Virus record (IMG/VR): IMGVR_UViG_3300020473_001965
Span: 124,001 to 188,000 of that record
Strand: one strand, 5' to 3'
DNA: 64,000 bases
The notes below the pieces were generated by a model. It was not told the origin of the DNA. It saw only the letters and a list, made by a program, of their open reading frames with translations, and did not search any database. Below are positions 822-58,088 of this stretch, in pieces. The position numbers and the translations under genes are program-made. The first letter of the stretch is position 1, and each line of letters begins with the position of its first letter.

Positions 822-1226
822 TTATTGGTAACTTTTAACAGACACACCTGAAGAGAGAAGCAAATCTATCCCAGACCTATCACGATACTCTTCGTCATAG
901 ATCACTTCATCAATTCCGGCGTTTATCATCGCTTTGGCACACATTCTACAAGGTGAGAGCGTCACATACATTATCTTCTTCTTAGGATTGTTATAATCCA
1001 TTTTTAGAAGTGCGTTAATTTCTGCATGAATCATTCCCGACGCGCCTGGTTCTACTGACTCTACTTCATTAGGCCCGCCTTGATGGTTTCCGTTATACCC
1101 AACGGAAAGAACTTGTGTATTATCGTCAGTGACTACTATAGCTCCCACTTGATATCTTGGATCGTATGACCTTCTAGAAATGTTTCTGGCAAAGCTCATC
1201 CATATTTCATCCCACTCTGGACGCAT
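822..1226 (-). CDS. dCMP deaminase (cytidine/deoxycytidylate deaminase family)
   Basis: HAEINAL and SPCRMC zinc motifs; VGA and GYNG motifs; AGGAGG RBS. Confidence 0.92.
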   Translation of the reverse strand: MRPEWDEIWMSFARNISRRSYDPRYQVGAIVVTDDNTQVLSVGYNGNHQGGPNEVESVEPGASGMIHAEINALLKMDYNNPKKKIMYVTLSPCRMCAKAMINAGIDEVIYDEEYRDRSGIDLLLSSGVSVKSYQ

Positions 1227-2251: not shown

Positions 2252-2851
2252 TTAGTCCTTTCTATTAGCCCTATTGATATATCTATGCATTTCCCAACAT
2301 CTTGGCTCGTAGAGGTCGGAGCCTCCAACAGCAATCTCGTCCAAGTCTTCTTGCTTTCTGTGGGTATAAAATGCATCTCTTCCCGTAATAGGACAGACAG
2401 CAGGACATATCTCAATTTTGGTTGCCCAGGGCATTATATCTCGAACTTCTTCAAAAATATTCCCTGAGGCTGACATCTGCAAGGAGCTTACCACTATTGT
2501 ATAACCTTGTTGAAAAATTTCTATTAAAGCTTTCGCCACACCTGGAATCATAAAGGCTTCATCTACAGCCACTACATCGGGTTTTTCTGATGCATCTTTT
2601 ATATATTTTAACACATCTTCACCCTTGTTTACACAAATCGCGTCCAGCCTTCCGCCTGAGTGAGTTACGATAGCATTGTTGTCATATCTATCGTCGATCA
2701 AGGGCTTGAATGCTACTATCTTCTTATTTTGATACCTGTATCTATCAATTGTAGCAAGCATTCTGGTTGTCTTGGATCCGAACATGGGACCTGCAAAAAT
2801 AATGAACTTTGGATCATTAGTCATTTCTTTCTCGTGCTTATTGTTTCTCAT
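2252..2851 (-). CDS. tdk: Thymidine kinase (type II)
   Basis: GPMFGSKTT P-loop, FKP..D.RY, VAVDEAF, lasso region AVGGSDLYEPRC. Start is probably 2851 or 2824 rather than 2905. Confidence 0.9.
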   Translation of the reverse strand: MRNNKHEKEMTNDPKFIIFAGPMFGSKTTRMLATIDRYRYQNKKIVAFKPLIDDRYDNNAIVTHSGGRLDAICVNKGEDVLKYIKDASEKPDVVAVDEAFMIPGVAKALIEIFQQGYTIVVSSLQMSASGNIFEEVRDIMPWATKIEICPAVCPITGRDAFYTHRKQEDLDEIAVGGSDLYEPRCWEMHRYINRANRKD

Positions 2852-3263
2852 CACAGCGACCGTAGTCGTCTTCGATTCGTACGCAGTTGCTTCTAAGATT
2901 ATCACCTACTTCAATTATTTCACAGTCTTCAAGCGCCTCAATTCGGTATGGGCAACCGCTTTGAACGTGAAGAACGTCTCCTGCACTCATTTCTTGTGTC
3001 TGGATTGGGTTAAGATCCCCCGGCTCTTTCAACGAATATTCATTTCCAAACGTTGCTAAAGCTCTTCCTTTTAACAAAAACAGTGTTTCATTTTTTTGTG
3101 TGTTATATTTGAAGCTAGTTCTAAAACCTGCGTTTATTAATAGCGTCTTTCCGTGTACACCAGTAAACCCTGACCATACTATCTCTTGACCCCAGGGTTT
3201 CTCAACACTTGTACCCTTGGTTACCCATGCGGTTTTCTTGTGTTTTCTAGACATAAACATCAT
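2838..3263 (-). CDS. Cupin, mannose-6-phosphate isomerase type II (ManC C-terminal)-like
   Basis: VEKPWGQE N-terminus and RIEDDYGR C-terminus. The usual metal-binding His positions appear substituted. Confidence 0.7.
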   Translation of the reverse strand: MMFMSRKHKKTAWVTKGTSVEKPWGQEIVWSGFTGVHGKTLLINAGFRTSFKYNTQKNETLFLLKGRALATFGNEYSLKEPGDLNPIQTQEMSAGDVLHVQSGCPYRIEALEDCEIIEVGDNLRSNCVRIEDDYGRCDEKQ

Positions 3264-4300: not shown

Positions 4301-5307
4301 CAATCTAGCTCCCACCAATCAATAGTCCTCTCAAGACCTTCCCAAAATCTTACAGTGGGCTCGTAACCGAGATCATTTTTAATCTCAGAAATGTCTGCTT
4401 GAGTGTGCATTACGTCCCCTGGCCTCCAGGGAGCATCTTGAACTACTACATGAGAAAATCGATTCTTGAAATACTCTAAGATTTCTTTGTTTGTAGTCCT
4501 GTCTCCGCAAGCAACGTTGTAACACTTACCCATAAACTTCATTGAAGCGTTTGCAGCTAAAACATTTGCATCTACAACGTTGTCAACATAACACATGTCT
4601 CTAGACTGTGTTCCGTCGCCGTCAGACCTCAGGGGTTTCATAAACTTAGTATTGTTACACCAGGCTGATACTGCAGTCGAATACGGCGAGTCTCCATACT
4701 GCCCCGGACCAAACACATTAAAGTATCGTAAACAAACAATATCTAGATTGTAGAGATCTCCAAATAATTTTGCCACATCTTCGATGGCACTCTTTTGCCA
4801 AGCGTAAGGTGATTTTGGATCTTTTGACTCCGCCTCTGTTGTAGGAAGAGTATCAGCGCCTCCGTACACTGAAGACGATGATGCCCAAACAACTCTGTCA
4901 ACAGCATTTCTAGAAGCTTCAAATAGAGCAACTGTCTTTGTTATATTGACGTCAGTAGTTTCAGTCGGATGCTCAACAGAATATGACACTCTAGGAACAG
5001 CGGCTTGATGAAATACTACATCGTACTCTCCTGATGCTACTAGCGATAATACTCTTTGATTAGCAAAATCATCTTGAATGACGAGAACCGTTCTGTCTGT
5101 AAAGGAACTGCTGTCTTTGGCTGCTAGCAAAAAAGAATCATAAAGCCCTGCATCTGGTACAGTTCTAAAGTCTAGGCCATCTAAAAGCTCAAGATGACCG
5201 TTTGACATATCGTCCACTATGGTAACAGACCATCCTTCTTTTACAAGCCTCTTGGCTAAGTTGCTCCCGATGAAACCGCAACCTCCCGTAACTAAAGCTT
5301 TTTTCAT
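4300..5307 (-). CDS. NAD-dependent NDP-sugar epimerase/dehydratase (extended SDR, WbpP/GalE-like)
   Basis: TGGCGFIG, HQAA, ASSSSVYG, SPYAWQK (YxxxK), LRYFNVFGP, RDMCYV, RPGDVMHT. Confidence 0.92.
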   Translation of the reverse strand: MKKALVTGGCGFIGSNLAKRLVKEGWSVTIVDDMSNGHLELLDGLDFRTVPDAGLYDSFLLAAKDSSSFTDRTVLVIQDDFANQRVLSLVASGEYDVVFHQAAVPRVSYSVEHPTETTDVNITKTVALFEASRNAVDRVVWASSSSVYGGADTLPTTEAESKDPKSPYAWQKSAIEDVAKLFGDLYNLDIVCLRYFNVFGPGQYGDSPYSTAVSAWCNNTKFMKPLRSDGDGTQSRDMCYVDNVVDANVLAANASMKFMGKCYNVACGDRTTNKEILEYFKNRFSHVVVQDAPWRPGDVMHTQADISEIKNDLGYEPTVRFWEGLERTIDWWELD

Positions 5308-5326: not shown

Positions 5327-6238
5327 CTACACCAAAATATGGGCAGAGTTTAAGTTAAAGCGCATTCTAACATCAACTTCTTTAGGAATTAAATTTAATT
5401 CTTTATAGACAGCATTTGTCAAAAAGTACAAAAAATTTAGATCGTATCTAAAAGTCTTTGCAACCTCAGACGACCTTAATACAAAATGCATGTCAAGCGT
5501 TGAGTCCCTATAAGAGGCATGAATTAGAGAAATACATGTATCATCTGTATATATAAACCGCCTTGATGTTACATGCTCTACTCTATTATACTCATTTTCT
5601 CCGCGTAACTCTCTTCTAATCTTTGTAATCATTGAAGAATAAATTTTCTTATAATAATCTTTTTCGTGCTCATAATCCATGACAGAAGGATCTACATCCT
5701 CAAAGGTCCCATCATCATAAAGTGTCATAGACAAGGGTGTAGCTTCATGACTAGGAGAGTTAGCAGCAAAAGTCTTGACAAAGTCTGCAATTAAATCTAA
5801 GTTGCCGTTTTCGATTGCTTCTATCTCGTTCTTTACGAGGCTTACATTGTAATCTAACTCTGATCCTCTTAAAACAGTGACATTAGGAAAGTGACAAAGC
5901 CTGTTAGCATGATTTTCAAAATCCTTATAGAGACCCTTGATATCTTCAAGAGATTGTATCTCATCTCCACGCATACTGTATCTTAAAATCACATCTTGAA
6001 AGTCTGGAAGCAGAATTACAAATCTATTGTTTAAGTTTAAGATTTCTCGAGACATACCATACTCATGATGTTTTGTGTCTCTCTCATATTGCGCAGCGTG
6101 AACAAGCATGGAAAGATATGACCTGTCTTGTATGTTCCACTTGTAGCTGGAATCCTTATGAAGCGAATTATAGAAAGTTGTTTTTCCTGAAAGGTCTGGG
6201 CCTTCGAGAATTATATAGTTTGTCGGAAATCTTGTCAT
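5327..6238 (-). CDS. Fusion of a dNMP (thymidylate)-kinase-like P-loop domain and a minimal thymidylate-synthase/dCMP-hydroxymethylase-fold domain
   Basis: N-terminus: ILEGPDLSGKTT and QDRSYLS (TMK motifs). C-terminus: SRRF..C..(LDMHFVL)RSSE......YD...SAH, which aligns with TS R126/R127, C146, R166/S167, position 177 and H207. Confidence 0.75.
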   Translation of the reverse strand: MTRFPTNYIILEGPDLSGKTTFYNSLHKDSSYKWNIQDRSYLSMLVHAAQYERDTKHHEYGMSREILNLNNRFVILLPDFQDVILRYSMRGDEIQSLEDIKGLYKDFENHANRLCHFPNVTVLRGSELDYNVSLVKNEIEAIENGNLDLIADFVKTFAANSPSHEATPLSMTLYDDGTFEDVDPSVMDYEHEKDYYKKIYSSMITKIRRELRGENEYNRVEHVTSRRFIYTDDTCISLIHASYRDSTLDMHFVLRSSEVAKTFRYDLNFLYFLTNAVYKELNLIPKEVDVRMRFNLNSAHILV

Positions 6239-9838: not shown

Positions 9839-10618
9839 TCAAGGACCAGAGTTATATTTCTTGACTAATGAATCGTAGAACTTTTTTTCAGGCCCTGTTT
9901 TTCCATTCCAAGGTTTCTTACTTCCTACAAAATGAAAAATTGCATTGCCCGATCTATGATAGTTGGCGTTAGAGTTGTAAATGTAAGGTGCATATAAAAC
10001 ATTGATTTTGTTTTCTACGAAAAATTGTCGCAAAAAAGGCTGATCGTCTGGAATACGTGATGCTTCTGAAATCTGTTTGCGAAGTTTTTGAAATTCTTTT
10101 GTCTTGAAAAACTCAGACTTGAACAAAAGAACGCCCGTATTTACGCCTCCAAAACTAGGATCGGTTGTCTCATACCACACTTTACTTTTTGCCTTTTGCT
10201 CAACACCAGAAATCAAGGCTTCAGAAGCTCGAAACTCACTTAGCCATCTATCGACATCTGTGTGGACGATTACGTCTGCATCGATATACATCATGTAGTC
10301 CGCTGAATGAATAGATGACTTTGTAAACGCGTCGAACCACCAGACATATTTGTCTGATTTCGAAGCTTTGGGTTTAAAGAACTTAGCACGAATTCCTAGC
10401 GACCTGATCTTTGCTTTTTGACTTTCCGTTATGTCGGGTGAAAAAACATAAAAATATAGCATTGCTGCTGTGTTTTTTGACAGAGAAAGAATTGTATTGA
10501 CAGCACCTGGATAGTGATTTTGATCAAAAGCTAGGATCGCACTGACCGCCGGCGTGGTTTGAGTGTCAAATACGCTCGTAAATCCATGATCATATCTTAA
10601 TTCTAACCATGTCGACAT
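9839..10618 (-). CDS. Glycosyltransferase family 8-like
   Basis: AFDQNH, YIDADVIV (DxD), NTGVLL, DDQPFL, YN, FHFVGSKKPW. Confidence 0.82.
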   Translation of the reverse strand: MSTWLELRYDHGFTSVFDTQTTPAVSAILAFDQNHYPGAVNTILSLSKNTAAMLYFYVFSPDITESQKAKIRSLGIRAKFFKPKASKSDKYVWWFDAFTKSSIHSADYMMYIDADVIVHTDVDRWLSEFRASEALISGVEQKAKSKVWYETTDPSFGGVNTGVLLFKSEFFKTKEFQKLRKQISEASRIPDDQPFLRQFFVENKINVLYAPYIYNSNANYHRSGNAIFHFVGSKKPWNGKTGPEKKFYDSLVKKYNSGP

Positions 10619-11218: not shown

Positions 11219-12601
11219 TCACTTTATTCCTAGTCTAGATGACCACTTAACCCTTATGCGGTCAATCATGGCTTCTATATCCTTTGCAACAAATCCTTTG
11301 GCTGCAGCCCTGTCTCTTATTGTACTCATGTCAACTGATAATAGTTCAGACGGATCCTGGCCGGTTCTTCTAGCTCTTCCTAAAATTCCTGCGCTGTGTC
11401 CGCGGACTTCTGCGTCGCAACCATAGTATTTTTCAATATTTTTTATGCTGTCCCACCGTGTTGTTGGATCTCCACAGTCATCACTTGATAGAGTTTCTGT
11501 ATCGTCGCAACTATGTTGAATTTCATGAGATAACGCATCTGCTAACTCGGCGGACAGCCAGTCTTGAAAACCTTCAATTGTCGGATATGATCTTGGAATA
11601 TCTAGTGTCAACACAAGATTAGACTTTGATCGATCTTCAATCACACAGACGTAAGCAGCCTCTACGTTGGCAGAGCCGTCATCGGTGACTGCTATGCCTA
11701 AGTGTACTTCATTGATGTTTTTAAATTCGTCAAATATGCTTGTGGGTAAAACAAGCGTCGCTTCAACTCCAGCCGATAATTTTTGAAGCTCATCAAACGT
11801 GCTTCTCGTAAAAAGAAAAGAAAATATGGCGTCTTCTAAATCATCAACGTATTGAGTCATATCAGGATCACCTGATGCTGCTTCTATCAAAAGGCCTCTT
11901 ACATACTCTCTTATGATTGATTCGTTCATAGCATCCTTTCCCCATGACGAATGAGAAAGCCATGCACGCTGTGTTTCTTCAGCTTCTTTTCGTGTCATCT
12001 TTCGCGCCTTTACCTGATTATCTAAATATATCGACATCAACTCTTTTACTGGTCGGCCAGTAGCATATGATTCTCCCCGGAAGCCAACGACAAATGCTGG
12101 AACCTCACAAGACGAAGTAAAATAATGAAACGCACTCTTTGAAGATGAGTTCGTCAAAGGGCAAGAAACTCTTTGAAAAGGTTGATCTTTCTGAGTCAGG
12201 TGGTGCATCTCATGTGGCACAACATTGTACAACTCGATTCTTAGTTTTTCAAGTACTTCAGAATCACCTAGTTTTTCTGGTGACAACTGAATGTCTATGT
12301 CGATTCTTGCTTCGGAGCTCTCAGTGAAACCTGCCTCACCATCGATATTCCACCCTGGATGACCTTCATCAAACTGATCAGTTCTTACTTTTACTTCTAT
12401 CTCATACAGGGCATACCCGACATCTTCCCACAAATCAAACCAAACGTCAGGGTCGATTGGGTAGTCCCAGACATATTGAAACGTTTTTTGACCTGGCTTT
12501 TTTAGCTTTGAAATAAAGCTCAGAATGTCTTTGATGACAGGGGCTGCAGCGTCTTGATAAAAGAAATCTTCTTGATCGAGACCTATTACTCGAGATTCCA
12601 T
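11219..12601 (-). CDS. Protein with two tandem HExxH (zincin-like) domains
   Basis: HEMHH..Q...CEVPA in domain 1 and HEIQH...AEVRG in domain 2, joined by MNESIIREYVRGLLIE. Likely start ATG at 12601 (GAGGG RBS). Confidence 0.65.
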   Translation of the reverse strand: MESRVIGLDQEDFFYQDAAAPVIKDILSFISKLKKPGQKTFQYVWDYPIDPDVWFDLWEDVGYALYEIEVKVRTDQFDEGHPGWNIDGEAGFTESSEARIDIDIQLSPEKLGDSEVLEKLRIELYNVVPHEMHHLTQKDQPFQRVSCPLTNSSSKSAFHYFTSSCEVPAFVVGFRGESYATGRPVKELMSIYLDNQVKARKMTRKEAEETQRAWLSHSSWGKDAMNESIIREYVRGLLIEAASGDPDMTQYVDDLEDAIFSFLFTRSTFDELQKLSAGVEATLVLPTSIFDEFKNINEVHLGIAVTDDGSANVEAAYVCVIEDRSKSNLVLTLDIPRSYPTIEGFQDWLSAELADALSHEIQHSCDDTETLSSDDCGDPTTRWDSIKNIEKYYGCDAEVRGHSAGILGRARRTGQDPSELLSVDMSTIRDRAAAKGFVAKDIEAMIDRIRVKWSSRLGIK

Positions 12602-12636
12602 AACTGCACCCTCACATAGCAATAAATATCACGCTA

Positions 12637-13611
12637 CTAGTAATAATCTGTCAGGTCAACACCCTTTTCTTTTGCGTCATTAAGGTGAATCAGGGGGTCA
12701 TAAGTGCCTGAATCGGACGTGATTGTTCGCAAACTTGAAGCGATCCCAGACTCCAAAGTAATGTAAGGTCGCCACCCTGAGGCTTCTCTAAACTTTGCAC
12801 TAGACAGAATATGATTGCCCAGATAATCCGTTTCAGGGTGCCACTTGATTATGCTGGAAACATCTTTCCCCACTATGCTTGAAAGCATCTCAACAATGCC
12901 CCCGGTGTTATAAGGCGTTTCAGCAGCTACATTATAATCAGCTCCAAACATACCCTTGACACAACTCATGAAGACTGCATTACAAAAATCAGAGACATGC
13001 ATGTAGTCCTTAGTCTTGTTAGGATTTAAAAACATGTCAAGCGAATTAACGTCATTAAGAGCTGAGTATATTGTCTTTGCTATCAAAGAGTTCATGTCGC
13101 CGGCGCCGCCGTATGCAAAAAGAGGTCGCATAATCACCCAGTCTCGAGCTGTGCTTCTTACGATCTGTTCTCCGGCTAGCTTCTGAACGCCATAAAAAGT
13201 TCTAGGGTTTAGGTCTGAATCCTCGAAGATTGGTCTGTCTTGATACTTTTCTGTATCATAGATTACTGTGGTACCCATATAACAAACTGGGACGTTTGCT
13301 TTTCTTGCCGCCCTTGCAATATTATGTGTCCCCATCACGTTACTAAGAGAAGAATCCTCAGCATTCAGTGCGACGACATCTGTTCCAACAACAGCGGCGT
13401 TATGAACGATTACATCGATACCTCTATTTGAAAGAACACTCGACCATACATCTTCAGTGTTTCCCCACACACAAGGTTCGTTTGTCTTGTGTCGTCTAAC
13501 AGCCAGATCCTCATCATCCATTAGTGAAACAAATTCATGATCAGTCGTTTGTATCAATCTCCCTAGATTGTCTCCGATGAATCCGCGTTCGCCTGTAATT
13601 GCAATTTTCAT
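12637..13611 (-). CDS. NAD-dependent NDP-sugar epimerase/dehydratase/reductase (second extended SDR)
   Basis: ITGERGFIG, HNAA, NVMGT, YGVQK, KDYMHV.D. The ATG at 13611 overlaps the upstream TGA. Confidence 0.85.
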   Translation of the reverse strand: MKIAITGERGFIGDNLGRLIQTTDHEFVSLMDDEDLAVRRHKTNEPCVWGNTEDVWSSVLSNRGIDVIVHNAAVVGTDVVALNAEDSSLSNVMGTHNIARAARKANVPVCYMGTTVIYDTEKYQDRPIFEDSDLNPRTFYGVQKLAGEQIVRSTARDWVIMRPLFAYGGAGDMNSLIAKTIYSALNDVNSLDMFLNPNKTKDYMHVSDFCNAVFMSCVKGMFGADYNVAAETPYNTGGIVEMLSSIVGKDVSSIIKWHPETDYLGNHILSSAKFREASGWRPYITLESGIASSLRTITSDSGTYDPLIHLNDAKEKGVDLTDYY

Positions 13612-13871
13612 ATACTTGAAATCCTCTCTATGATTGCCAAAGACCACGTATTAGAATTTGGGCTTGGCACATAATCGTATAGCACATGAGGTGCTACTTC
13701 ATCATACGTGTCTAGCTCAAAATTTTCTATTAGATAGACGATTCCTTTTGTGGCCTTGCTGGCTTTTTTGTTTGAGTAATCTTTTTCACATGCCTCTTTG
13801 GCAAGATCTAGATGTGAATACACACCTATTGATTCATTCTTTTCTAAGATAACTCTGCTGACTAAAAACAT
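13608..13871 (-). CDS. Hypothetical protein
   Basis: ORF with AGGG RBS, translationally coupled to the downstream SDR; IGVYS..LA motif common in small phage proteins. Confidence 0.55.
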   Translation of the reverse strand: MFLVSRVILEKNESIGVYSHLDLAKEACEKDYSNKKASKATKGIVYLIENFELDTYDEVAPHVLYDYVPSPNSNTWSLAIIERISSI

Positions 13872-13913: not shown

Positions 13914-14477
13914 TTAAGTTAATCTAAATTCTTTTAAAATATTTTTAATGTACGAAAATAGCAAGCCTTCATTTACAAGATGCGACACAACTTTAACATT
14001 ATCGCTTTTTAGTTGTTCAATCGCAACAATGTTATTTGGACTATCTTCCCAGAGATATACTACGTCGGCATTTAGTTTCTCAACATATTCAAGAGCCTTG
14101 ACATACTTGGCTCGAGGATCGGAACTTCCTACTGCTTCGATTTTTGGCATAGGATTGACGCCATAATCAGAAAGAAACTTTGCAACAGGAGCTGGATTCG
14201 CCCTTGCAGTCAATACTATAACTCTTTCCGACCCATGCTGTTTTAAAGCACTTTCCATTTTTGACCATACAGACTTAATAATAGAAGCGTCAGGTGGATA
14301 GACATCAAACTCAGCAAAGTCAAGAACATCACCTGGCTGACTTAGAGATCGTTCATAATCTCTATACTGTCTAGAGGTTACGTACTCTGTCTCACCTGAC
14401 TTTCTATTAATGATCACTTTAGCGCCTGAGTCTACTAAGGTGTCATCAAAATCAAATATGTAAAATGGGCTTTCCAT
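13914..14477 (-). CDS. HAD-superfamily phosphatase
   Basis: IFDFDDTL (motif I), VLTAR (II), K (III), WEDSPNN (IV). Confidence 0.8.
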   Translation of the reverse strand: MESPFYIFDFDDTLVDSGAKVIINRKSGETEYVTSRQYRDYERSLSQPGDVLDFAEFDVYPPDASIIKSVWSKMESALKQHGSERVIVLTARANPAPVAKFLSDYGVNPMPKIEAVGSSDPRAKYVKALEYVEKLNADVVYLWEDSPNNIVAIEQLKSDNVKVVSHLVNEGLLFSYIKNILKEFRLT

Positions 14478-14522
14478 GAAATAACTACTTACCAAAAGAT
14501 AAGTATGTATTTGATTGATTAT

Positions 14523-14972
14523 TTACTCGATCTCTTGATCATAAGGTTCTTCAATCAAATAACCAGTCGAATGAACTCTGTCCAAATAATCTTCAAGTTG
14601 CTCAAAAGTTGTACATACCTTTATACCGCTTCTTGCTAGCATCAAGTTAAACTTTGCCCCTTCTGGGAGGCCTTGACAAAAGTACACGATCGGAACATTC
14701 TTAGCGTAGGCATAGCCGGCTTCCCATATGGTTCCGATATCCTTGTCTCTAGTATTGACAATCAAGAAATCTGATGTTTCGATATGATACAAGTTCCCTG
14801 CGAAGGTTTCATCCTGGGTCTCTTTTGGTGCATTCGGAGGGCAAACAAAAATCTTTCTTGGGCTTGCAAGGTCGATCCACTTTCGACTCTCACAAATCTC
14901 TTCAAGCCTTGTTAGCTCTTCTGCTTGAGTAGGATTGAACCACCCAGATGCCAAATAAATCTTCTTTTCCAT
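14523..14972 (-). CDS. Nucleoside 2-deoxyribosyltransferase / nucleotide N-hydrolase (NDT, DNPH1/Rcl, MilB family)
   Basis: KIYLASGWF, D.GTIWEAGYAYA (catalytic Glu), FNLML. Confidence 0.85.
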   Translation of the reverse strand: MEKKIYLASGWFNPTQAEELTRLEEICESRKWIDLASPRKIFVCPPNAPKETQDETFAGNLYHIETSDFLIVNTRDKDIGTIWEAGYAYAKNVPIVYFCQGLPEGAKFNLMLARSGIKVCTTFEQLEDYLDRVHSTGYLIEEPYDQEIE

Positions 14973-14974
14973 TT

Positions 14975-15958
14975 TTACTTCTCCATCTTTTTTTGATAAT
15001 CAGACTCAAGATCTGAAATTTGCTCTAGTAAATTGTTCCACTGTTGTCTAAACTTCGTGTTTCCGTCTGCTTCTTCAGTAGGCGGGTTAGTACCATTAAG
15101 ATCATAACGATAAGCTTGGTAAATTGTATCATTCGGATGATATTCAATATGCTGGTCGCTGTCATCATCAGGCCAGTAAAGATTAGTCCCCGTTCCTGCC
15201 CTTACATTTTTAATATAGTGCCATGCCGGACTGGTAAGCGCTTTTGTACCAATGACAGTACTAGCCTCAGGCAAGACCTTGATTATAGCCAGTGCCATCT
15301 TTGCAGCAATAAGATTATCAATTGCAGGTTGAATCTGCTTGTCTGATCTTTGCTTAACAAATCCGATAATATCTTTGAGATTGAACCTGCCATAGTAAAA
15401 TGTGGAGAGGCACTTTGGAAGAATAGTTCTCGCATCCATCATAGAAATTTGACGAGTGTCAACCATATCTGCGTAAAGTTTCTTTGAGTCCTCAACATGT
15501 CGCTTCCATCTGCGATAAAGCTCTGGACTGTTCTCAACAGAGCTTGGTACAAGACAGGGCTCATGGTGAAGAAATCTATCACCTGTACACTGGGCTGCAA
15601 AAGATCCTGCACGATGGCGGATGAGATGCGTTACGGTCTGTAGGTCGATTCCGCTGAACTTGAAGGTGAAGCTAAAAATCTCCATTGGCGTTGGAAGCGC
15701 TCTAAAATTTAGAACGTCCTCGAGATTTTCGCTTAGCTCATAAGTTGATGCAGATGATGGATCAGTGTACTCTGGCGTATCCGCCCAAGTTGCTTTAACA
15801 TAGCGCCAAGCAACTTCTCTCATTTGTTCAGCAGTTGGGTGATCGACAAGTTCAACTTCTAGACCTTCAAGGTCGTTAAGAAAATCAGTCGTTGGCTCTT
15901 CGTCAAATCGAAGAGTCATAGGTAGTTCTACAGGTGTTAGATCGTTATTTTGAGGCAA
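14975..15958 (-). CDS. Divergent ThyX-fold (flavin-dependent thymidylate synthase-like) protein
   Basis: TPME.FSFTF, HLIRHRAGSF, DARTILP, RFNLK...FVKQR. The canonical RHRx7S Ser is Cys here. Confidence 0.8.
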   Translation of the reverse strand: MPQNNDLTPVELPMTLRFDEEPTTDFLNDLEGLEVELVDHPTAEQMREVAWRYVKATWADTPEYTDPSSASTYELSENLEDVLNFRALPTPMEIFSFTFKFSGIDLQTVTHLIRHRAGSFAAQCTGDRFLHHEPCLVPSSVENSPELYRRWKRHVEDSKKLYADMVDTRQISMMDARTILPKCLSTFYYGRFNLKDIIGFVKQRSDKQIQPAIDNLIAAKMALAIIKVLPEASTVIGTKALTSPAWHYIKNVRAGTGTNLYWPDDDSDQHIEYHPNDTIYQAYRYDLNGTNPPTEEADGNTKFRQQWNNLLEQISDLESDYQKKMEK

Positions 15959-15978
15959 TTTTTTTCTCCTTAGATAGT

Positions 15979-16007
15979 ATAATACGGCCTGCTTTGTCTT
16001 TGTACAA
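15979..16007 (-). promoter_or_regulatory. sigma70-like promoter for thyX-like and NDT genes
   Basis: TTGTAC-N17-TATTAT followed by an AAGGAG RBS. Confidence 0.7.
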
Positions 16008-16008
16008 G

Positions 16009-16413
16009 CTAATATCCAGTATTGATTCTGTCATGAATGATCCCATCTTTTTCTTTGTAAGCACTGTAAAGATCATTTGAATCAAACCCTACAAGAATCA
16101 ATAACGAAAAGAAGTAGTTAAAAGCATCTACTACCTCTTCGAGAAAAGCACTTCTATCAAAATCAGTTACTTGAGTTGATCTGTGCGGTTTCCAGTTCTT
16201 TAAATGTTGGAGTGCTTCAAACATCTCTTCGACACCTCTTAGTGCGATATCGCGAACATATTGTTGATCTTCTCTCGTCTTTAGATCAAGAGGCCAAACA
16301 GGAGATATTTCCGGATTTTTTGATTGTAATGCTTTCATAAATGCCTCTCTCATTTGAAACATTTCTAAAAGTTTGTCATCACCACTGGTCGACATCAGCT
16401 TGTTCCTCATCAT
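16009..16413 (-). CDS. All-alpha NTP pyrophosphatase (dimeric dUTPase / T4 gp56 dCTPase / MazG-like)
   Basis: EEMFEA...KNWKPH...EEVVDAFNY...Y..K...I..R..GY. Confidence 0.8.
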   Translation of the reverse strand: MMRNKLMSTSGDDKLLEMFQMREAFMKALQSKNPEISPVWPLDLKTREDQQYVRDIALRGVEEMFEALQHLKNWKPHRSTQVTDFDRSAFLEEVVDAFNYFFSLLILVGFDSNDLYSAYKEKDGIIHDRINTGY

Positions 16414-16773: not shown

Positions 16774-17577
16774 CTATGATTGTCTTTTTGGTGACCAAAA
16801 TGTTGATCTTCCGTCTTTAGTTTTTTCTTTCACAACTTCGTTGCCATCTAGATCAACTTTTCTATTATATACTAAAAACTTTGATCCGTATTCCCCTAAA
16901 TTTCCATCAAATTGCTTATATGATTTAAGCGTCGCACCGCCAGATTGAAAACTTGTGACCATTACTTCTCTAACAGCATCGTTGAGCTTCACCAACTCCC
17001 GGTCTGAGATTTCTTCAACCTTTCTATGAGGTGAAATCTCTGCTAGCCAAAGTGCATCAGACTTTATATAATTTCCAACACCAGCGACAACAGACTGGTC
17101 CATTAAAGCTTGTACGACTAGCTTGGCATCTTGTGTCCTCATCTGTTGAACAAATAAGTGGTCCGGACATTTTTCGCTTAATAGATCTGGCCCTAATGAC
17201 TTTAACTTTTCAATCAATGGCTGGGGACCTTTTACAAACTTCATTGTTCCAAAATTTCTAATATCATTGTAGTATATCATTTCATCATCAACTACAAACT
17301 TAAATCTTGTATGCTTGTTAGGGTGGATTGACCACTCGCCTGTCATTCCTAGTGTTGACCAAATTGACCAGGTCCCTTCTAAGAGCCAGTACATAAACTT
17401 ACCGTGAACTCCTGTCCCAAGAACATGTAGCGGTAATTCTTCTTCAAATATATCAGCACCATCCGGAGATTTCTTTGTGTACCTCCCAGAGACAACTGAT
17501 ACTGAATTCAAAGTTTTTCCCGTCACTGCCCTTGAAAGATCTAATGCATATCTTCTTACTTCTGGTCCTTCTGGCAT
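16774..17577 (-). CDS. Fpg/Nei family DNA glycosylase/AP lyase (Nei-type, zincless finger)
   Basis: N-terminal MPEGPEV, HGK, LGMTG, D.RNFG, LGPD, LMDQ..VAGVGNYI (H2TH), C-terminal GRSTFW without Cys ligands. Confidence 0.92.
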   Translation of the reverse strand: MPEGPEVRRYALDLSRAVTGKTLNSVSVVSGRYTKKSPDGADIFEEELPLHVLGTGVHGKFMYWLLEGTWSIWSTLGMTGEWSIHPNKHTRFKFVVDDEMIYYNDIRNFGTMKFVKGPQPLIEKLKSLGPDLLSEKCPDHLFVQQMRTQDAKLVVQALMDQSVVAGVGNYIKSDALWLAEISPHRKVEEISDRELVKLNDAVREVMVTSFQSGGATLKSYKQFDGNLGEYGSKFLVYNRKVDLDGNEVVKEKTKDGRSTFWSPKRQS

Positions 17578-17603
17578 TTTTGAACTTTATCTCCTACTTG
17601 TGT

Positions 17604-17632
17604 ATTATATAGAATGTAGGGCTTTTGTTCAA
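17604..17632 (-). promoter_or_regulatory. sigma70-like promoter for the nei-like operon
   Basis: TTGAAC-N17-TATAAT followed by an AGGAG RBS. Confidence 0.75.
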
Positions 17633-18304
17633 ATGAATCGAATCATTATATCTGACACACATATCGGTACTAAATTTTATAGATCAAAAGCACTTCTCAA
17701 ATTCTTGCAAGAAAATCTCCATAAGTACGATGAACTAATCTTAGCAGGAGATATTATTGATTTTATTAAAATCCCTGTGTTTACAGAGCGCTGTCTTGAA
17801 ATATTGGAAAAAGCTCAGTCAGCAAAAAGAATTGTTTACGTCGTTGGAAATCATGATGAATCTCTAGTCGGTGTTATCGGAAAAAAAGTAATGGGGGTTG
17901 AGTTTGTCAAGAGATATGAGTTCGAAGAAGATGGTAGAAAGTTTAGAGTAGAGCATGGTGATGCTTATGACAAAGGCGTTCTTCATAACCGAATCTTTGT
18001 CAAGTTTCTTTCCGTCATTCAAAACATGCTTGAGTTTACATTTAACTTTGACTTCACATCTTGGTGGACAGCAATTCAGATTAAAAAGCACAAGCTAAGA
18101 TCGATTATTCATATCCTTAGGCACAATCCGAAAATCGATGTCTTTATTATGGGTCACACACACATACCCGAAGCTTTAATCTGGGTTGATGAAGATCAGA
18201 ATATAAAAACCTACATTAACTCAGGCGACTGGGTCACTCACCAGACCTATGTTACCATTGAAGAGGGGGTTGCGAGACTTAGGAAGTTCGAAGATCAGGA
18301 GTAG
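17633..18304 (+). CDS. Calcineurin-like metallophosphoesterase (LpxH / UDP-2,3-diacylglucosamine hydrolase-like)
   Basis: ISDTHIG, GDIID, GNHD, EHGD, MGHTH, NSGDW. The real start is probably the ATG at 17633. Confidence 0.85.
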   Translation: MNRIIISDTHIGTKFYRSKALLKFLQENLHKYDELILAGDIIDFIKIPVFTERCLEILEKAQSAKRIVYVVGNHDESLVGVIGKKVMGVEFVKRYEFEEDGRKFRVEHGDAYDKGVLHNRIFVKFLSVIQNMLEFTFNFDFTSWWTAIQIKKHKLRSIIHILRHNPKIDVFIMGHTHIPEALIWVDEDQNIKTYINSGDWVTHQTYVTIEEGVARLRKFEDQE

Positions 18305-18720
18305 TTATTCTTCAAAAAGTTGTGGTAATTTACTAGAGCCCCGTCTTTTGGTTCGACTTTTTTCCATTCTCCTAGACAAAAAATACGATATGCATCTGAG
18401 CCGTACTTTCCGATCCCATAGAGTACATCTGGTTGATCTTTCCAGTCTTTTTGCAGGTAATCCTTAGACATATCGACAAGGGCTTTAGAACGTCTCTGAG
18501 ACAACCCTAAGGGTTTTATCAGCGCTTCTATTTCAACTGGATTAGCACTTGCCATGGCTGATGGGTCTGGCCAGCGGCGCAAACACTCCCAAAAATAAGG
18601 TTCAGCTTGGACTCGCTTTGTTAGGTTGCAAAATATACAGACAACAAAGATCTTCCAGGGGTCTTCCCAAAGCTGTTCTTGAATTAGGTTGTAGGGTGAT
18701 TTAGGGGGTTCCCATCGCAT
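18295..18720 (-). CDS. MBD4-like HhH-GPD mismatch DNA glycosylase (catalytic domain only)
   Basis: WEPPKSPYNLIQEQLWEDPWK, LIKPLGL...R, LYGIGKYGSDAYRIFC..EWKKVEPKD..L..Y: a near-colinear match to the vertebrate MBD4 glycosylase domain as I recall it. Confidence 0.88.
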   Translation of the reverse strand: MRWEPPKSPYNLIQEQLWEDPWKIFVVCIFCNLTKRVQAEPYFWECLRRWPDPSAMASANPVEIEALIKPLGLSQRRSKALVDMSKDYLQKDWKDQPDVLYGIGKYGSDAYRIFCLGEWKKVEPKDGALVNYHNFLKNNYS

Positions 18721-50900: not shown

Positions 50901-50929
50901 AAAATAACACGCATAAAGAAAATGTTCAA
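50901..50929 (-). promoter_or_regulatory. sigma70-like promoter, possibly leaderless, for the polA-like gene
   Basis: TTGAAC-N17-TATTTT, 5 nt before the GTG start. Confidence 0.55.
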
Positions 50930-54378: not shown

Positions 54379-54385
54379 AAGCCTA

Positions 54386-54670
54386 CTATAATGCGTTTGA
54401 TATAATACCTAAATCTGTAGGTATTCTAAGAAAAGTTCCGGGTGGGCACTGCAGACCCCAACCTATGTCGGAAGCGGCGGCTATTACCCACCAGAGGCGT
54501 GTGTCTCCATAGTATTTGTGTGCAACGTGATCCAACCTCTCAGATTCTCTTAGGGCAAGCTCTTTTACAGGTACTTTTTTCCTCTTGACAAGCCCACGTA
54601 CAACCCTTATAGCGTCAGATGTTCCGTAGTAAAGCCTTTCACGCTGAGAAGTTATCTTATGTCTTTTCAT
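54386..54670 (-). CDS. LysM / tail protein X-like baseplate protein
   Basis: ERLDHVAHKYYGDTRLWWVIAAAS...PGTFLRIP. Confidence 0.82.
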   Translation of the reverse strand: MKRHKITSQRERLYYGTSDAIRVVRGLVKRKKVPVKELALRESERLDHVAHKYYGDTRLWWVIAAASDIGWGLQCPPGTFLRIPTDLGIISNAL

Positions 54671-54673
54671 TCG

Positions 54674-57823: not shown

Positions 57824-57839
57824 TTAAGTTCACCTATTA

Positions 57840-58088
57840 CTAAGTATTCATCTTCTGAATATTCTCTTTAAACTCCTGACGCTCTTCGTCAGATAGCTCA
57901 TTTAATCCTTGATAGAATTTTGCGATGTTTGGCATGAATATACTGGTTATCTCTTCAACAAAACCTTCTACGTGTGCCTTCTGTTCTTCATCGAGCTGAT
58001 CGTAGTACTTCTTGAATCGATCGTCTTCTTGAAGCTTCTTTTTAAAGTCTACATCTAAAAGGTCGGATGGGTTTACTCTTGATGACAT
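57840..58088 (-). CDS. Hypothetical helical protein
   Basis: GGAG RBS; packed between the TMP and the baseplate gene. Confidence 0.6.
   Translation of the reverse strand: MSSRVNPSDLLDVDFKKKLQEDDRFKKYYDQLDEEQKAHVEGFVEEITSIFMPNIAKFYQGLNELSDEERQEFKENIQKMNT

What the first reader, a model, noticed from the sequence alone, without database searches (positions are those of the whole stretch)
14523..16007. ThyX-fold flavoenzyme with a remodelled active site, co-transcribed with an NDT/DNPH1 hydrolase
Compared with T. maritima ThyX as I recall it (H53-E-T-P-F-E; RQWFRHRIASYNELS88GR90Y), this protein reads L-P-T-P-M-E and THLIRHRAGSFAAQC-T-G-DR. The folate-stacking His becomes Leu, Gln75 becomes His, Glu86 becomes Ala, Ser88 becomes Cys and Arg90 is displaced. 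The FAD-binding RHR and the R174 equivalent remain, and there is an extra ~80-aa C-terminal extension. It shares a dedicated promoter with an NDT-family gene, whose relatives DNPH1 and MilB cleave modified pyrimidine nucleotides. Inference: this is not a routine dTMP synthase but a new flavin-dependent pyrimidine-modifying activity.
Basis: partly seen in the sequence, partly recalled or inferred. Interest (0 to 1): 0.78.

Follow-up and report, generated by a model that had tools for sequence, protein, structure and literature searches.

The report
Remodelled ThyX-fold flavoenzyme in phages
A marine giant phage carries a relative of the flavin-dependent thymidylate synthase ThyX that has lost the residues this enzyme needs for its normal reaction and gained a fixed cysteine and aspartate; it belongs to a large, unstudied viral family and may make an unusual DNA building block, though an odd but ordinary thymidylate synthase is not excluded.

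Summary
Window 14975-15958(-) encodes a 327-aa ThyX-fold protein (Pfam Thy1 E 1.6e-17; AF2 pLDDT 96.7; Z 16.8 to M. tuberculosis ThyX). Window 14523-14972(-), 2 nt downstream, encodes an NDT-family protein.

The flavin- and nucleotide-binding arginines are kept. The catalytic loop Ser88-Gly-Arg90-Tyr91 reads Cys-Thr-Gly-Asp, and the folate-stacking His53 is Leu. There is also a conserved N-terminal Met-Pro segment and about 80 extra C-terminal residues.

These changes are fixed in more than 1,100 homologues, nearly all viral, including Geobacillus phage GR1. They mark one well-supported clade, separate from canonical ThyX.

The gene travels with NDT (80 of 85 loci), a MazG-like pyrophosphatase, a dNMP phosphatase, kinases and glycosyltransferases. 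In eight related loci a canonical ThyX lies within 10 kb. One syntenic relative has canonical ThyX, this variant and a kinase::ThyA-like fusion together.

- Thr-His for Arg74-Gln75 also occurs in bona fide M. tuberculosis ThyX.
- The NDT resembles true deoxyribosyltransferases, not DNPH1/MilB.
- The "dedicated promoter" is not supported.

Best reading (about 0.5): a neofunctionalised pyrimidine-C5 flavoenzyme. Main rival (about 0.3): a divergent thymidylate synthase. No paper on this variant turned up in the searched library.

The parts
14975..15958 (-). ThyX-fold flavoenzyme of the 'C-type' clade, 327 aa. N-terminal Met-Pro extension (1-~25), ThyX core (~26-244), conserved loop region and terminal helix (245-327). 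Key residues: L88, E93, R114-H115-R116, C124-T125-G126-D127-R128, R177, R204.
   Evidence: ORF; Pfam Thy1 E 1.6e-17; AF2 pLDDT 96.7, pTM 0.93; Foldseek PolB/ThyX E 2.5e-11; VIA Z 16.8 to 3gwc; residue map; conservation; clade.
14523..14972 (-). Nucleoside 2-deoxyribosyltransferase-family protein, 149 aa, start 2 nt after the ThyX-like stop. Invariant Y6, D78, E84 (predicted nucleophile), N109, M111, Y144.
   Evidence: Pfam PF05014 E 1.3e-14; phrog_7995 1.2e-26; PDB best hit N-deoxyribosyltransferase 6evs 4.8e-7, only NDT/PDT among enzyme hits; 62 orthologues aligned.
15959..16008 (-). 50-nt spacer upstream of the ThyX-like gene, with AAGGAG ribosome-binding site and a weak sigma-70-like match (TGTACA-16-TATTAT).
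   Evidence: Promoter-like matches are at chance level; function not shown.
16009..16413 (-). MazG-like / dimeric-dUTPase-like nucleoside triphosphate pyrophosphohydrolase, 134 aa, immediately upstream.
   Evidence: PF08761 E 8.4e-5, phrog_12184 7e-16, phrog_173 1.6e-12; within 10 kb of the ThyX-like gene in 80 of 85 related loci, in 31 of 50 loci fetched with more distant family members and in L222/L223.
13914..14495 (-). HAD-superfamily phosphatase-like protein, 193 aa, directly downstream of NDT. Candidate dNMP phosphatase.
   Evidence: phrog_415 1.6e-11, weak PF00702. Other lineages have YfbR-like HD or NT5C 5'-deoxynucleotidases at the equivalent place. In L004 a MazG::HAD fusion lies just upstream of the ThyX-like gene.
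5327..6238 (-). P-loop dNMP-kinase-like domain fused to a ThyA/dCMP-hydroxymethylase-fold domain, 303 aa. Invariant C235, R255, S256, D266, H300.
   Evidence: phrog_761/phrog_160; profile vs PDB: YorR 1e-6, T4 dCMP hydroxymethylase 0.016; AF2 pLDDT 94.2; Foldseek best: phage HY126 dCMP hydroxylase AfhB 9iqu 3e-7, then T4 dCH; within 10 kb in 32 of 85 loci.
9839..10618 (-). GT8-family glycosyltransferase (context: possible sugar branch of a DNA modification pathway).
   Evidence: PF01501 E 1.4e-14. Linked to the ThyX-like gene in only 2 of 85 loci, so weakly tied to it.
12637..13647 (-). NAD-dependent epimerase/dehydratase (SDR), 336 aa (context: nucleotide-sugar metabolism).
   Evidence: PF01370 E 1.4e-27, phrog_540 4.7e-47; within 10 kb in 47 of 85 loci.
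822..1226 (-). dCMP deaminase (context: supplier of dUMP).
   Evidence: PF00383 E 6.6e-23.
2252..2905 (-). Thymidine kinase (context: re-entry of deoxynucleosides into the nucleotide pool).
   Evidence: PF00265 E 7e-34.

Best explanation
The gene encodes a neofunctionalised member of the ThyX fold.

Shown: it still has the residues that in ThyX hold FAD (RHR, E93, N193) and those that hold the phosphate and the O4 side of a uracil nucleotide (R177, R204).

Shown: the active-site loop that in ThyX carries Ser88, Arg90 and Tyr91 has become Cys-Thr-Gly-Asp, and the folate-gating His53 has become Leu. With N85->Ala, the whole His53-Tyr91-Asn85 network is absent.

Inferred: the enzyme performs flavin-dependent chemistry at C5 of a uracil-type (deoxy)nucleotide by a changed mechanism. 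Cys124 lies where Ser88 sits next to the flavin-carbinolamine and the substrate, so it could act as a ThyA-like nucleophile or acid, and Asp127 could act as general acid/base. The product would be something other than dTMP, most plausibly a C5-oxygenated dUMP such as 5-hydroxymethyl- or 5-hydroxy-dUMP.

Inferred: it works inside a nucleotide-pool remodelling module. A MazG-like pyrophosphatase (dNTP to dNMP), a dNMP phosphatase (dNMP to deoxynucleoside) and the NDT enzyme (moving the deoxyribose to another base) recycle unwanted deoxynucleotides. Thymidine kinase then returns the new nucleoside to the pool as substrate.

The exact substrate and product are not known.
For: - Fold and cofactor/nucleotide-binding residues kept.
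- Loss of S88, R90, Y91, H53 and N85, which PMC11940539 describes as conserved (Ser88 and Tyr91 as strictly conserved and critical); Y91 mutation slows the methylation step about 1000-fold, and H53 stacks on folate.
- The replacements are fixed: 120 of 120 close homologues have RHRx7C; the motif is invariant to 46% identity; Cys and Asp are kept across most of a much wider set.
- One clade: all 72 C-type rows lie in a 104-row group (SH-aLRT 99). Canonical ThyX, including the copies resident on relatives' contigs, lies apart.
- Paralogy: a canonical 238-aa ThyX (RHRx7SxRY, E 8e-37 to T. maritima ThyX) lies within 10 kb in 8 of 85 loci. L070, syntenic with the window, has canonical ThyX, the C-type gene and the kinase::ThyA-like fusion within 14 kb.
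- Conserved neighbours in lineages 24-46% identical: NDT, MazG-like, and HD/NT5C/HAD nucleotidase. A MazG::HAD fusion lies next to the gene in L004.
- Links to glycosylation: a GT-A-like domain is fused to a C-type ThyX-like protein (P0130). GR1 has a glycosyltransferase whose homologues in Bacillus phage G are annotated alpha-glucosyltransferase and which matches a T4-like alpha-glucosyltransferase weakly. In phage G that glycosyltransferase sits beside a full-length ThyA-like gene. In GR1 the only full-size TS-type gene is the ThyX-like one; GR1 also has a 151-aa ThyA-like ORF right after it.
- The family is essentially viral: 2 hits in 185,579 species genomes, both MAG contigs with phage-like context.
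Against: - No enzymology exists, and no product can be read from sequence.
- In GR1's complete genome the variant is the only annotated TS-type gene. In the 84 kb of this phage that I could read (window plus 20 kb) there is a dCMP deaminase but no other full thymidylate synthase. Both facts fit an ordinary dTMP-supply role.
- A dUTPase-like gene next to a thymidylate synthase is also what ordinary metabolism predicts.
- S88C and S88A mutants of T. maritima ThyX were made and crystallised (PDB 3g4c, 3g4a). From memory, not checked here, they retain some activity, so Cys alone proves nothing.
- Canonical ThyX was seen near only 8 of 85 loci.
- The glycosyltransferase links rest on one fusion protein and on weak annotation-level homology.
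- In this phage the glycosyltransferase and SDR genes could serve the kinase::ThyA-like enzyme instead.
Confidence: 0.5

Rival explanations
1. It is a genuine but highly divergent flavin-dependent thymidylate synthase. It makes dTMP from dUMP, with Cys124 and Asp127 taking over the acid/hydrogen-bond roles of Ser88 and Tyr91, and Leu88 stacking on folate in place of His53. The neighbouring dUTPase-like, phosphatase, NDT and TK genes are an ordinary salvage-and-supply set that channels host deoxynucleotides into dTTP.
For: - Thy1 fold with RHR, R147 and R174 equivalents kept.
- Only annotated TS-type gene in the complete GR1 genome, which also has RNR, TK and a dUTPase.
- This phage has a dCMP deaminase and no other full thymidylate synthase in the 84 kb read.
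- Jumbo phages usually carry either ThyA or ThyX (PMC7824862).
- By T4 logic, the kinase::ThyA-like fusion would be the cytosine-modifying enzyme and this gene the 'td' equivalent.
Against: - Four residues described as conserved in ThyX (S88 and Y91 as strictly conserved and critical) are all replaced, and the replacements are themselves fixed.
- A canonical ThyX coexists with it in eight related loci, including one syntenic with the window. That would be redundant.
- The C-type proteins form their own clade with added N- and C-terminal segments.
- hhalign between this family and marine canonical ThyX aligns only the C-terminal half.
Confidence: 0.3
2. It is a partner of the ThyA-fold enzyme rather than a stand-alone C5 enzyme. 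It supplies reduced flavin (ThyX enzymes oxidise NADPH) or a flavin-bound one-carbon or oxygen species to the ThyA-like domain, or it acts on a cytosine nucleotide. Together they would make a modified dCMP such as 5-hydroxy- or 5-hydroxymethyl-dCMP, which is then glycosylated.
For: - Small ThyA-like ORFs lie directly downstream of the ThyX-like gene in GR1 and in two Clostridia MAG contigs. In the marine phages the ThyA-like domain is fused to a kinase in the same gene array.
- The ThyA-like domain keeps the catalytic Cys and has Asp at the position that specifies cytosine in T4 dCMP hydroxymethylase (rule as stated in PMC13326640).
- Its best structural matches are the flavin-dependent dCMP hydroxylase AfhB and T4 dCH.
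- GR1 has a nitroreductase-family flavin reductase just upstream of the ThyX-like gene.
- SDR and GT8 genes are nearby.
Against: - A mere flavin reductase would not need to keep the nucleotide-phosphate and uracil-O4 arginines (R177, R204), which are nearly invariant across the family.
- Retention of the R174 equivalent argues for a uracil-type rather than a cytosine substrate.
- The ThyA-like partner was found within 10 kb in only 32 of 85 loci and not in several distant lineages.
- No physical interaction was tested.
Confidence: 0.12
3. It is a catalytically dead ThyX relic kept for a structural or regulatory role, for example nucleotide binding in a replication complex.
For: Loss of four catalytic residues.
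Against: - The replacement residues, and the added N- and C-terminal segments, are conserved across hundreds of sequences and deep divergence. That is the pattern of a working active site.
- FAD- and substrate-binding residues are kept.
Confidence: 0.03

Closest known systems
Flavin-dependent thymidylate synthase ThyX (Thy1, PF02511; T. maritima TM0449, M. tuberculosis Rv2754c)
   Same: Same fold (Z 15-17, about 200-215 residues aligned). RHR motif, E58, N163, R147 and R174 equivalents kept. 'TH-x-hydrophobic-x-RHR' as in the mycobacterial type, which is also the best profile match (7e-21).
   Different: Ser88-Gly-Arg90-Tyr91 replaced by Cys-Thr-Gly-Asp. His53 replaced by Leu, Asn85 by Ala, Glu86 by Ala. 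A 24-28-residue N-terminal extension beginning Met-Pro and about 80 extra C-terminal residues. Only 16-21% identity. Forms a separate clade and coexists with canonical ThyX in some genomes.
PolB, the UMP/dUMP C5-methylase of polyoxin biosynthesis (Streptomyces cacaoi; PDB 4p5a/4p5b)
   Same: The only described neofunctionalised ThyX paralogue (PMC5954106), and the top Foldseek match of the model (E 2.5e-11, TM 0.76 by target). Like the present case, it is a second ThyX-type gene beside a housekeeping one.
   Different: PolB still methylates and is about 235 aa without the extensions. It belongs to an antibiotic gene cluster of a bacterium, not to phages. Whether it keeps Ser/Tyr/His was not examined here.
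ThyA-fold pyrimidine hydroxymethylases and hydroxylases of phages (T4 gp42 dCMP hydroxymethylase; RB69 gp48, DLP3 gp80 and HY126 AfhB 5-hydroxy-dCMP synthases)
   Same: The functional analogy proposed: a thymidylate-synthase homologue diverted to make a C5-oxygenated pyrimidine nucleotide. A dedicated dNMP kinase then phosphorylates it, and glycosyltransferases fed by phage-made NDP-sugars decorate it in DNA. The hydroxylases even use a flavin (PMC13326640). The window has the matching accessories: MazG-like pyrophosphatase, kinase, two SDRs and a glycosyltransferase.
   Different: Those enzymes have the unrelated ThyA fold. In this window the ThyA-fold counterpart is a separate gene (5327-6238). 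No ThyX-fold enzyme of this kind has been described in the literature searched.
Nucleoside 2-deoxyribosyltransferases (Lactobacillus NDT/PDT, Bacillus psychrosaccharolyticus NDT 6evs), versus DNPH1/Rcl, MilB and BlsM
   Same: The NDT-like partner matches NDT/PDT structures by sequence (6evs 4.8e-7). It keeps the Tyr, Asp(-6), Glu nucleophile, Asn-x-Met and C-terminal Tyr positions in all 62 orthologues.
   Different: No hit to DNPH1, MilB or BlsM at E up to 1. The Asp six residues before the Glu is, from memory of the Rcl literature, a Ser in the nucleotide-hydrolysing DNPH1 branch. A role next to a ThyX-type gene in phages is not described.

Membership tests
ThyX, flavin-dependent thymidylate synthase (EC 2.1.1.148) | Thy1/ThyX fold | tested here: met
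   Pfam PF02511 64.4 bits, cut-off 24.8; AF2 model pLDDT 96.7; Foldseek E 1e-10 to 1e-11 and VIA Z 15-17 to many ThyX structures.
ThyX, flavin-dependent thymidylate synthase (EC 2.1.1.148) | ThyX signature motif RHRx7S (Ser88 in T. maritima) | tested here: not met
   RHRAGSFAAQC: Cys124 in place of Ser. Cys in 120 of 120 close homologues.
ThyX, flavin-dependent thymidylate synthase (EC 2.1.1.148) | Arg90 and Tyr91 in the active-site loop (S-x-R-Y) | tested here: not met
   Aligned residues are Gly126 and Asp127. Arg128 follows two positions later, but position 129 is F/W/D, so no conserved Tyr exists in any register. Importance of Tyr91 and Arg90: PMC11940539.
ThyX, flavin-dependent thymidylate synthase (EC 2.1.1.148) | Folate/flavin-stacking His53 (H-x-[ST]-x-x-E-H) | tested here: not met
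   Leu88, five residues before the conserved Glu93, the same spacing as H53-E58. Leu in nearly all family members.
ThyX, flavin-dependent thymidylate synthase (EC 2.1.1.148) | FAD- and dUMP-binding arginines (R78, R80, R147, R174) and E58 | tested here: met
   R114, R116, R177, R204 and E93 are invariant or nearly so, even across 96 sequences at 21% mean column identity.
ThyX, flavin-dependent thymidylate synthase (EC 2.1.1.148) | Catalyses dUMP + CH2-THF + NADPH to dTMP; complements thyA | not testable with these tools
   Needs enzymology or genetics.
Nucleoside 2-deoxyribosyltransferase (PF05014, NDT/PDT type) | Catalytic Glu nucleophile in D-x-G-[ST]-x-x-E, with the Asp six residues upstream | tested here: met
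   D78-I-G-T-I-W-E84 aligns with DDGSAFE of PDT 1s2d and DTGTAWE of 6evs. D78, G80 and E84 are invariant in 62 orthologues.
Nucleoside 2-deoxyribosyltransferase (PF05014, NDT/PDT type) | N-terminal Tyr, Asn-x-Met motif, C-terminal Tyr | tested here: met
   Y6, N109-L-M111 and Y144 are invariant. Their roles are recalled from the L. leichmannii NDT literature, not tested.
DNPH1/Rcl, MilB, BlsM (nucleotide N-glycosidases of the NDT superfamily) | Sequence relationship to solved DNPH1/MilB/BlsM; phosphate-binding Ser in place of the Asp upstream of the Glu | tested here: not met
   No such chain among PDB hits at E up to 1. Asp78 is kept. The Ser rule is from memory.
ThyA-fold dCMP hydroxymethylase / 5-hydroxy-dCMP synthase (for the neighbour gene 5327-6238) | ThyA fold with catalytic Cys and Asp at the N177 position (cytosine specificity) | tested here: met
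   Foldseek 9iqu 3e-7, 1b5d 3e-5. The profile alignment to T4 dCH pairs C235 with Cys148 and D266 with Asp179. Both are invariant in 23 orthologues.
ThyA-fold dCMP hydroxymethylase / 5-hydroxy-dCMP synthase (for the neighbour gene 5327-6238) | Asn at the D169 position, proposed as diagnostic of 5-hydroxy-dCMP synthases (PMC13326640) | tested here: inconclusive
The window protein has Glu ('RSSE'). Orthologues have Asn, Asp or Glu.

The most novel reading that the evidence does not exclude
The C-type clade is a new class of ThyX-fold enzyme that combines a flavin with covalent, ThyA-style catalysis. Cys124 would attack C6 of the pyrimidine, with Asp127 and perhaps the conserved N-terminal proline acting as acid/base. 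This would install a hydroxymethyl or hydroxyl group, not a methyl, on dUMP. That would be a second, flavin-based entry to hypermodified thymidine, used by a widespread group of marine jumbo phages and by phages of Firmicutes. The linked MazG-like enzyme, nucleotidase and NDT would strip host thymidine nucleotides down to deoxyribose and rebuild them as substrate.
Probability: 0.3. Interest if true: 0.85.

Novelty: new variant of a known kind. Interest (0 to 1): 0.68.

Why it matters
All known routes to hypermodified pyrimidines in phage DNA start from ThyA-fold enzymes. ThyX has one known diverted paralogue, PolB, and that one still methylates.

A large viral clade of ThyX-fold proteins with a rebuilt catalytic loop would be a new starting point for phage DNA modification chemistry, and hence for phage resistance to restriction and other nucleases. 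It would also be a natural experiment on how the nucleophile-free ThyX mechanism can be rewired.

The family is abundant in ocean metagenomes: more than 1,100 proteins and 222 IMG/VR matches. It therefore also bears on how marine phages reshape host nucleotide pools.

A cultured member, Geobacillus phage GR1, makes the question directly testable.

If the enzyme turns out to be an ordinary thymidylate synthase, it would still show that Ser88, Tyr91, Arg90 and His53 are dispensable for ThyX catalysis. That matters for ThyX inhibitor design.

Tried and rejected
- DNA search of the 5-kb region against 50,697 phage records found nothing.
- Single-sequence PDB search was marginal (E 0.08); a family profile was needed.
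- hhalign of the close family against marine canonical ThyX aligned only residues 150-232, so the N-terminal residue map rests on HMMER alignments to T. maritima and M. tuberculosis ThyX.
- I tried to learn whether this phage's own genome has a canonical ThyX or ThyA:
  - The 64-kb window has none.
  - Two walks of 10 kb to the left found none.
  - Two IMG/VR scans with canonical ThyX queries were swamped by hundreds of equally similar marine phage ThyX genes and gave no overlap beyond three contigs already known.
  - About 150 kb of the roughly 236-kb genome remains unread.
- The broad alignment A3 was too divergent for a genome-collection scan. The close alignment found only two MAG contigs.
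- One translation attempt failed on an internal stop.
I could not measure whether Cys124, Asp127, the N-terminal Pro or the C-terminal loop line the active site.
- GR1 glycosyltransferase: no Pfam and no PDB sequence hit. Its link to T4 alpha-glucosyltransferase rests on a PHROG name, phage G annotation and one weak tblastn match.
- Rejected: the DNPH1/MilB-type reading of the NDT gene.
- Rejected: a dedicated promoter as a conserved feature.
- Rejected: a pseudoenzyme (conservation pattern).
- Literature searches for this variant, for GR1, and for ThyX together with NDT or with hypermodification found no description.


Full report
**What is there.** The window is part of a marine jumbo phage genome (ENA ERZ842402 contig of 296,665 bp; also IMG/VR UViG_3300020473_001965 of 235,672 bp). 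Nearly all genes run on the minus strand.

At 14975-15958(-) lies a 327-codon ORF with a TTG start. An AAGGAG site precedes it, and the N-terminus (MPQN...) is conserved in relatives, so the start is real. Two bases after its stop, at 14523-14972(-), starts a 149-codon ORF.

Pfam assigns the first to Thy1/ThyX (E 1.6e-17, 64 bits) and the second to Nuc_deoxyrib_tr (E 1.3e-14). PHROGs agree.

**Fold.** An AlphaFold2 model built on 96 family sequences is very confident (pLDDT 96.7, pTM 0.93).
- Foldseek ranks PolB, the UMP/dUMP methylase of polyoxin synthesis, first. ThyX of M. tuberculosis, C. glutamicum and T. maritima follow (E about 1e-10).
- VIA-align gives Z 16.8 to M. tuberculosis ThyX over about 213 residues.
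- The ThyX core is roughly residues 26-244. Residues 1-25 and 245-327 are extra. The last helix superposes on the terminal helix of canonical ThyX in some alignments, so much of the 'extension' is a conserved, non-helical insertion at about 245-300.

**Active site.** The HMMER alignment to T. maritima ThyX and the family-profile alignment to M. tuberculosis ThyX (7e-21) agree.
- Kept: R78/H79/R80 (R114/H115/R116), E58 (E93), R147 (R177), R174 (R204) and N163 (N193).
- Changed: H53->L88, N85->A121, E86->A122, S88->C124, G89->T125, R90->G126, Y91->D127.

A 2025 structural paper on T. maritima ThyX (PMC11940539) says the following:
- Ser88 and Tyr91 are strictly conserved and critical. They sit within hydrogen-bond distance of the flavin-carbinolamine hydroxyl.
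- Arg90 is conserved and hydrogen-bonds to Tyr91.
- His53 stacks on folate or on reduced flavin and is held by Tyr91 and Asn85.

That whole network is therefore gone here.

Thr-His in place of Arg74-Gln75 is also what genuine M. tuberculosis ThyX has ('THELIRHR').

**Not a one-off.**
- A search of 5.8 billion proteins found 1,158 homologues. The 120 listed are 56-100% identical, mostly from marine metagenomes, and all 120 have RHRx7C.
- A search of 1.84 billion cluster representatives found only 399 clusters at E<=0.001. The query therefore sees its own family rather than the much larger mass of canonical ThyX (inference).
- VTHxIRHR...AQCTGDR is invariant down to the 46%-identical protein of Geobacillus phage GR1, the only cultured phage with a close homologue.
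- In more distant, roughly 300-aa relatives the His of RHR is often lost, but Q-C-[ST]-G-[DE] persists.
- In a 163-sequence tree, all 72 sequences with this motif fall in one 104-member group (SH-aLRT 99). A canonical S-x-R group and a third 'GGRD' group are separate.
- 36 of 61 C-type proteins begin Met-Pro.
- Among 185,579 species genomes only two MAG contigs carry a close relative, both with phage-like neighbours.

**Gene neighbourhood.** I fetched 80 IMG/VR loci plus 5 others (GR1 and four metagenome loci) and scored the neighbours within 10 kb:

| Neighbour | Loci (of 85) |
|---|---|
| NDT | 80 (the five misses include at least four loci that end within 2.5 kb downstream of the gene) |
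| MazG-like pyrophosphatase and its small upstream ORF | 80 |
| DnaE-type polymerase | 62 |
| SDR (336-aa type) | 47 |
| SDR (335-aa type) | 41 |
| Nei/Fpg glycosylase | 48 |
| HhH-GPD glycosylase | 40 |
| Kinase::ThyA-like fusion | 32 |
| GT8 glycosyltransferase | 2 |

The same logic recurs in lineages only 24-46% identical:
- GR1: NDT, thioredoxin, YfbR-like 5'-deoxynucleotidase, glycosyltransferase, thymidylate-kinase-like protein, RNase H, nitroreductase-family protein, ThyX-like, a 151-aa ORF, DnaE, dUTPase_2.
- L168: NDT, YfbR-like, ThyX-like, kinase-like, methyltransferase, DnaE.
- L167: NDT, kinase-like, then a glycosyltransferase-like domain fused to the ThyX-like domain.
- L169: NDT (faint), dNMP phosphatase, MazG-like, ThyX-like, PolA, glycosyltransferase fragment.
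- L222/L223: MazG-like, NDT, HD, ThyX-like, a small ThyA-like ORF, DnaE.
- L004: a MazG::HAD fusion sits immediately upstream.
- Of 50 loci fetched with more distant family members (C-type, GGRD and some canonical-type rows), 31 have a MazG-like gene and 31 an NT5C-type nucleotidase.

**Paralogy.** Eight of the 85 loci also carry a 227-238-aa canonical ThyX within 10 kb. It has H-x-S-x-x-E-H and RHRx7SRRY, and scores E 8e-37 against T. maritima ThyX.

L070 is syntenic with the window: HhH-GPD, Nei, MazG, ThyX-like, NDT, SDR, DnaE, kinase::ThyA-like, TK, DHH, dCMP deaminase. It has the canonical ThyX about 6 kb upstream. Three thymidylate-synthase-type genes thus coexist within 14 kb. This is the strongest argument that the C-type gene is not simply the phage's thymidylate synthase.

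Against it:
- GR1's complete genome annotates no other TS.
- In the window plus 20 kb to its left I found a dCMP deaminase and TK but no other full TS.
- About 150 kb of this genome could not be read.

**The NDT partner.** Its PDB sequence hits among enzymes are nucleoside deoxyribosyltransferases only (6evs 4.8e-7, then 1s2d, 7m5h, 9gn4, 1f8x). There are none to DNPH1, MilB or BlsM.

Y6, D78, G80, E84, N109, M111 and Y144 are invariant in 62 orthologues. From memory of the Lactobacillus enzyme, these match the NDT catalytic set, including the Asp that DNPH1 replaces by Ser to admit a phosphate.

It therefore most likely handles deoxynucleosides, not nucleotides. Its closest isolate homologue is again in GR1 (40.6% identity), so the pair is inherited together.

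**The kinase-TS fusion.** Window 5327-6238(-) encodes a P-loop kinase-like half (profile hit to SPBc2 YorR, 1e-6) joined to a ThyA-fold half.
- Its best sequence match is T4 dCMP hydroxymethylase (E 0.016, pairing the catalytic Cys and Asp179).
- Its best structural matches are the flavin-dependent dCMP hydroxylase AfhB of phage HY126 and T4 dCH.
- C235, R255, S256, D266 and H300 are invariant.

The Asp at the ThyA-N177 position is the known cytosine-specificity switch (PMC13326640).

Together with the two SDRs and GT8, this suggests a glycosylated 5-hydroxy- or 5-hydroxymethyl-cytosine pathway, like those of RB69 and DLP3. It would run in parallel with, or in cooperation with, the ThyX-like module.

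**Promoter.** The sigma-70-like match in the 50-nt spacer is one of 14 in a region where shuffles give 11.8 +/- 3.6. A TGTACAAAGA-like motif recurs upstream in relatives. In several of them it reads, by my inspection of the alignment, as the 3' end of the preceding ORF (not checked by ORF calling). Many relatives have about 1 kb, room for another gene, between MazG and the ThyX-like gene, or small ORFs between it and NDT. Co-transcription of the two genes here is likely (2-nt spacing). A dedicated promoter is not shown.

**Interpretation.** What is shown: a ThyX-fold protein that keeps the flavin- and nucleotide-binding residues, has a rebuilt and fixed catalytic loop, forms its own viral clade, is linked to NDT, pyrophosphatase and nucleotidase genes, and is sometimes a paralogue of a canonical ThyX.

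What is inferred: it performs non-thymidylate C5 chemistry on a uracil-type nucleotide. The retained R174 equivalent argues for uracil rather than cytosine. A hydroxymethyl or hydroxyl product is possible, given three points:
- the glycosyltransferase links;
- my recollection, not checked here, that canonical ThyX intermediates can be trapped as 5-hydroxymethyl-dUMP;
- the recent finding that ThyA-fold relatives became flavin-dependent hydroxylases.

I put this at about 0.5, a divergent genuine thymidylate synthase at about 0.3, a partner or cytosine-directed role at about 0.12, and a dead enzyme at about 0.03.

No paper in the searchable library describes this variant.

Noticed in passing
window 5327-6238 (-): A 303-aa fusion of a P-loop dNMP-kinase-like domain with a shortened ThyA/dCMP-hydroxymethylase-fold domain. 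The catalytic Cys (C235) and an Asp (D266) at the cytosine-specifying position are invariant. Best structural matches are the flavin-dependent dCMP hydroxylase AfhB (9iqu) and T4 dCH. This may be a one-polypeptide 'modify then phosphorylate' enzyme for a C5-oxygenated dCMP.
   Followed up: partly
L001 8969-9424 (Geobacillus phage GR1); L222 8992-9585; L223 8981-9562: Small (151-197 aa) ORFs with ThyA-like core motifs (Cys, R-S-x-D/N, Asp at the N177 position) sit immediately downstream of the ThyX-like gene in three Firmicute-associated phage contigs. The GR1 copy reads QRSSN, i.e. Asn at the D169 position proposed as diagnostic of 5-hydroxy-dCMP synthases.
   Followed up: partly
window 15950-15958 (-), codons 1-3 of the ThyX-like gene; family-wide: C-type ThyX-like proteins begin Met-Pro-[Gln/Lys/Arg]-Asn (36 of 61 predicted proteins). 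A conserved N-terminal proline recalls enzymes that use Pro-1 catalytically (Fpg/Nei, tautomerases). Whether it reaches the active site could not be measured.
   Followed up: partly
L004 8989-9942: In a 58%-identical relative, a MazG-like pyrophosphatase domain is fused to a HAD phosphatase domain directly upstream of the ThyX-like gene. That gives a one-protein route from dNTP to deoxynucleoside.
   Followed up: partly
L167 7726-9381 (protein P0130): A 551-aa protein joins a GT-A-type glycosyltransferase-like domain (weak Pfam GT2; atlas neighbours are viral GT2/GT7C families) to a C-type ThyX-like domain. NDT and a kinase-like gene lie just upstream.
   Followed up: partly
window 16774-17577 (-) and 18295-18720 (-): A Nei/Fpg-type and an HhH-GPD-type DNA glycosylase flank the module and recur near it in 48 and 40 of 85 related loci. 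A metallophosphoesterase lies between them on the opposite strand (17477-18304 +). Their role in a phage (repair, host DNA attack, or handling of modified bases) is unexplained.
   Followed up: no
window 11219-12622 (-): A 467-aa protein with two HExxH motifs (HEMHH, HEIQH) and no Pfam or PHROG match. Found near the ThyX-like gene in only 3 of 85 loci.
   Followed up: no
L166 and L224 (20 kb left of the window); window 2838-3263 (-): The phage encodes an Fe-superoxide-dismutase C-domain protein, a pterin-4a-carbinolamine dehydratase and a cupin annotated as cysteine-dioxygenase-like (phrog_7851). This hints at pterin- or oxygen-dependent chemistry. A GMP reductase (3260-4318) is also present.
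   Followed up: no
L194-L215 (IMG/VR loci): A third group of ThyX-like proteins has Gly-Gly-Arg-Asp ('MQHGGRDNDWR') where canonical ThyX has S-x-R-Y. It is also accompanied by MazG-like and NT5C-type nucleotidase genes.
   Followed up: partly
L172 4968-5885 (Pseudomonas phage LS1, Pbunavirus); L171 5968-6726 (Xanthomonas phage XcP1): The 'thymidylate synthase' of PB1-like and Carpasina-like phages has R-T-R instead of RHR and T-S-R instead of S-x-R. It falls in the canonical group of the tree but is itself atypical.
   Followed up: no
window 26587-35313, 35314-39243, 50926-54378, 54674-57823, 58099-62730 (all -): Very large ORFs (2908, 1309, 1150, 1049 and 1543 aa). The three at 50926-62730 gave no Pfam match; the 2908- and 1309-aa ORFs were not scanned. 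Presumably structural or injected proteins of the jumbo phage.
   Followed up: no
whole contig: The ENA contig (296,665 bp) is about 61 kb longer than the IMG/VR contig with the identical gene (235,672 bp). A relative's contig is 235,681 bp. The longer assembly may therefore contain a repeated genome segment.
   Followed up: no
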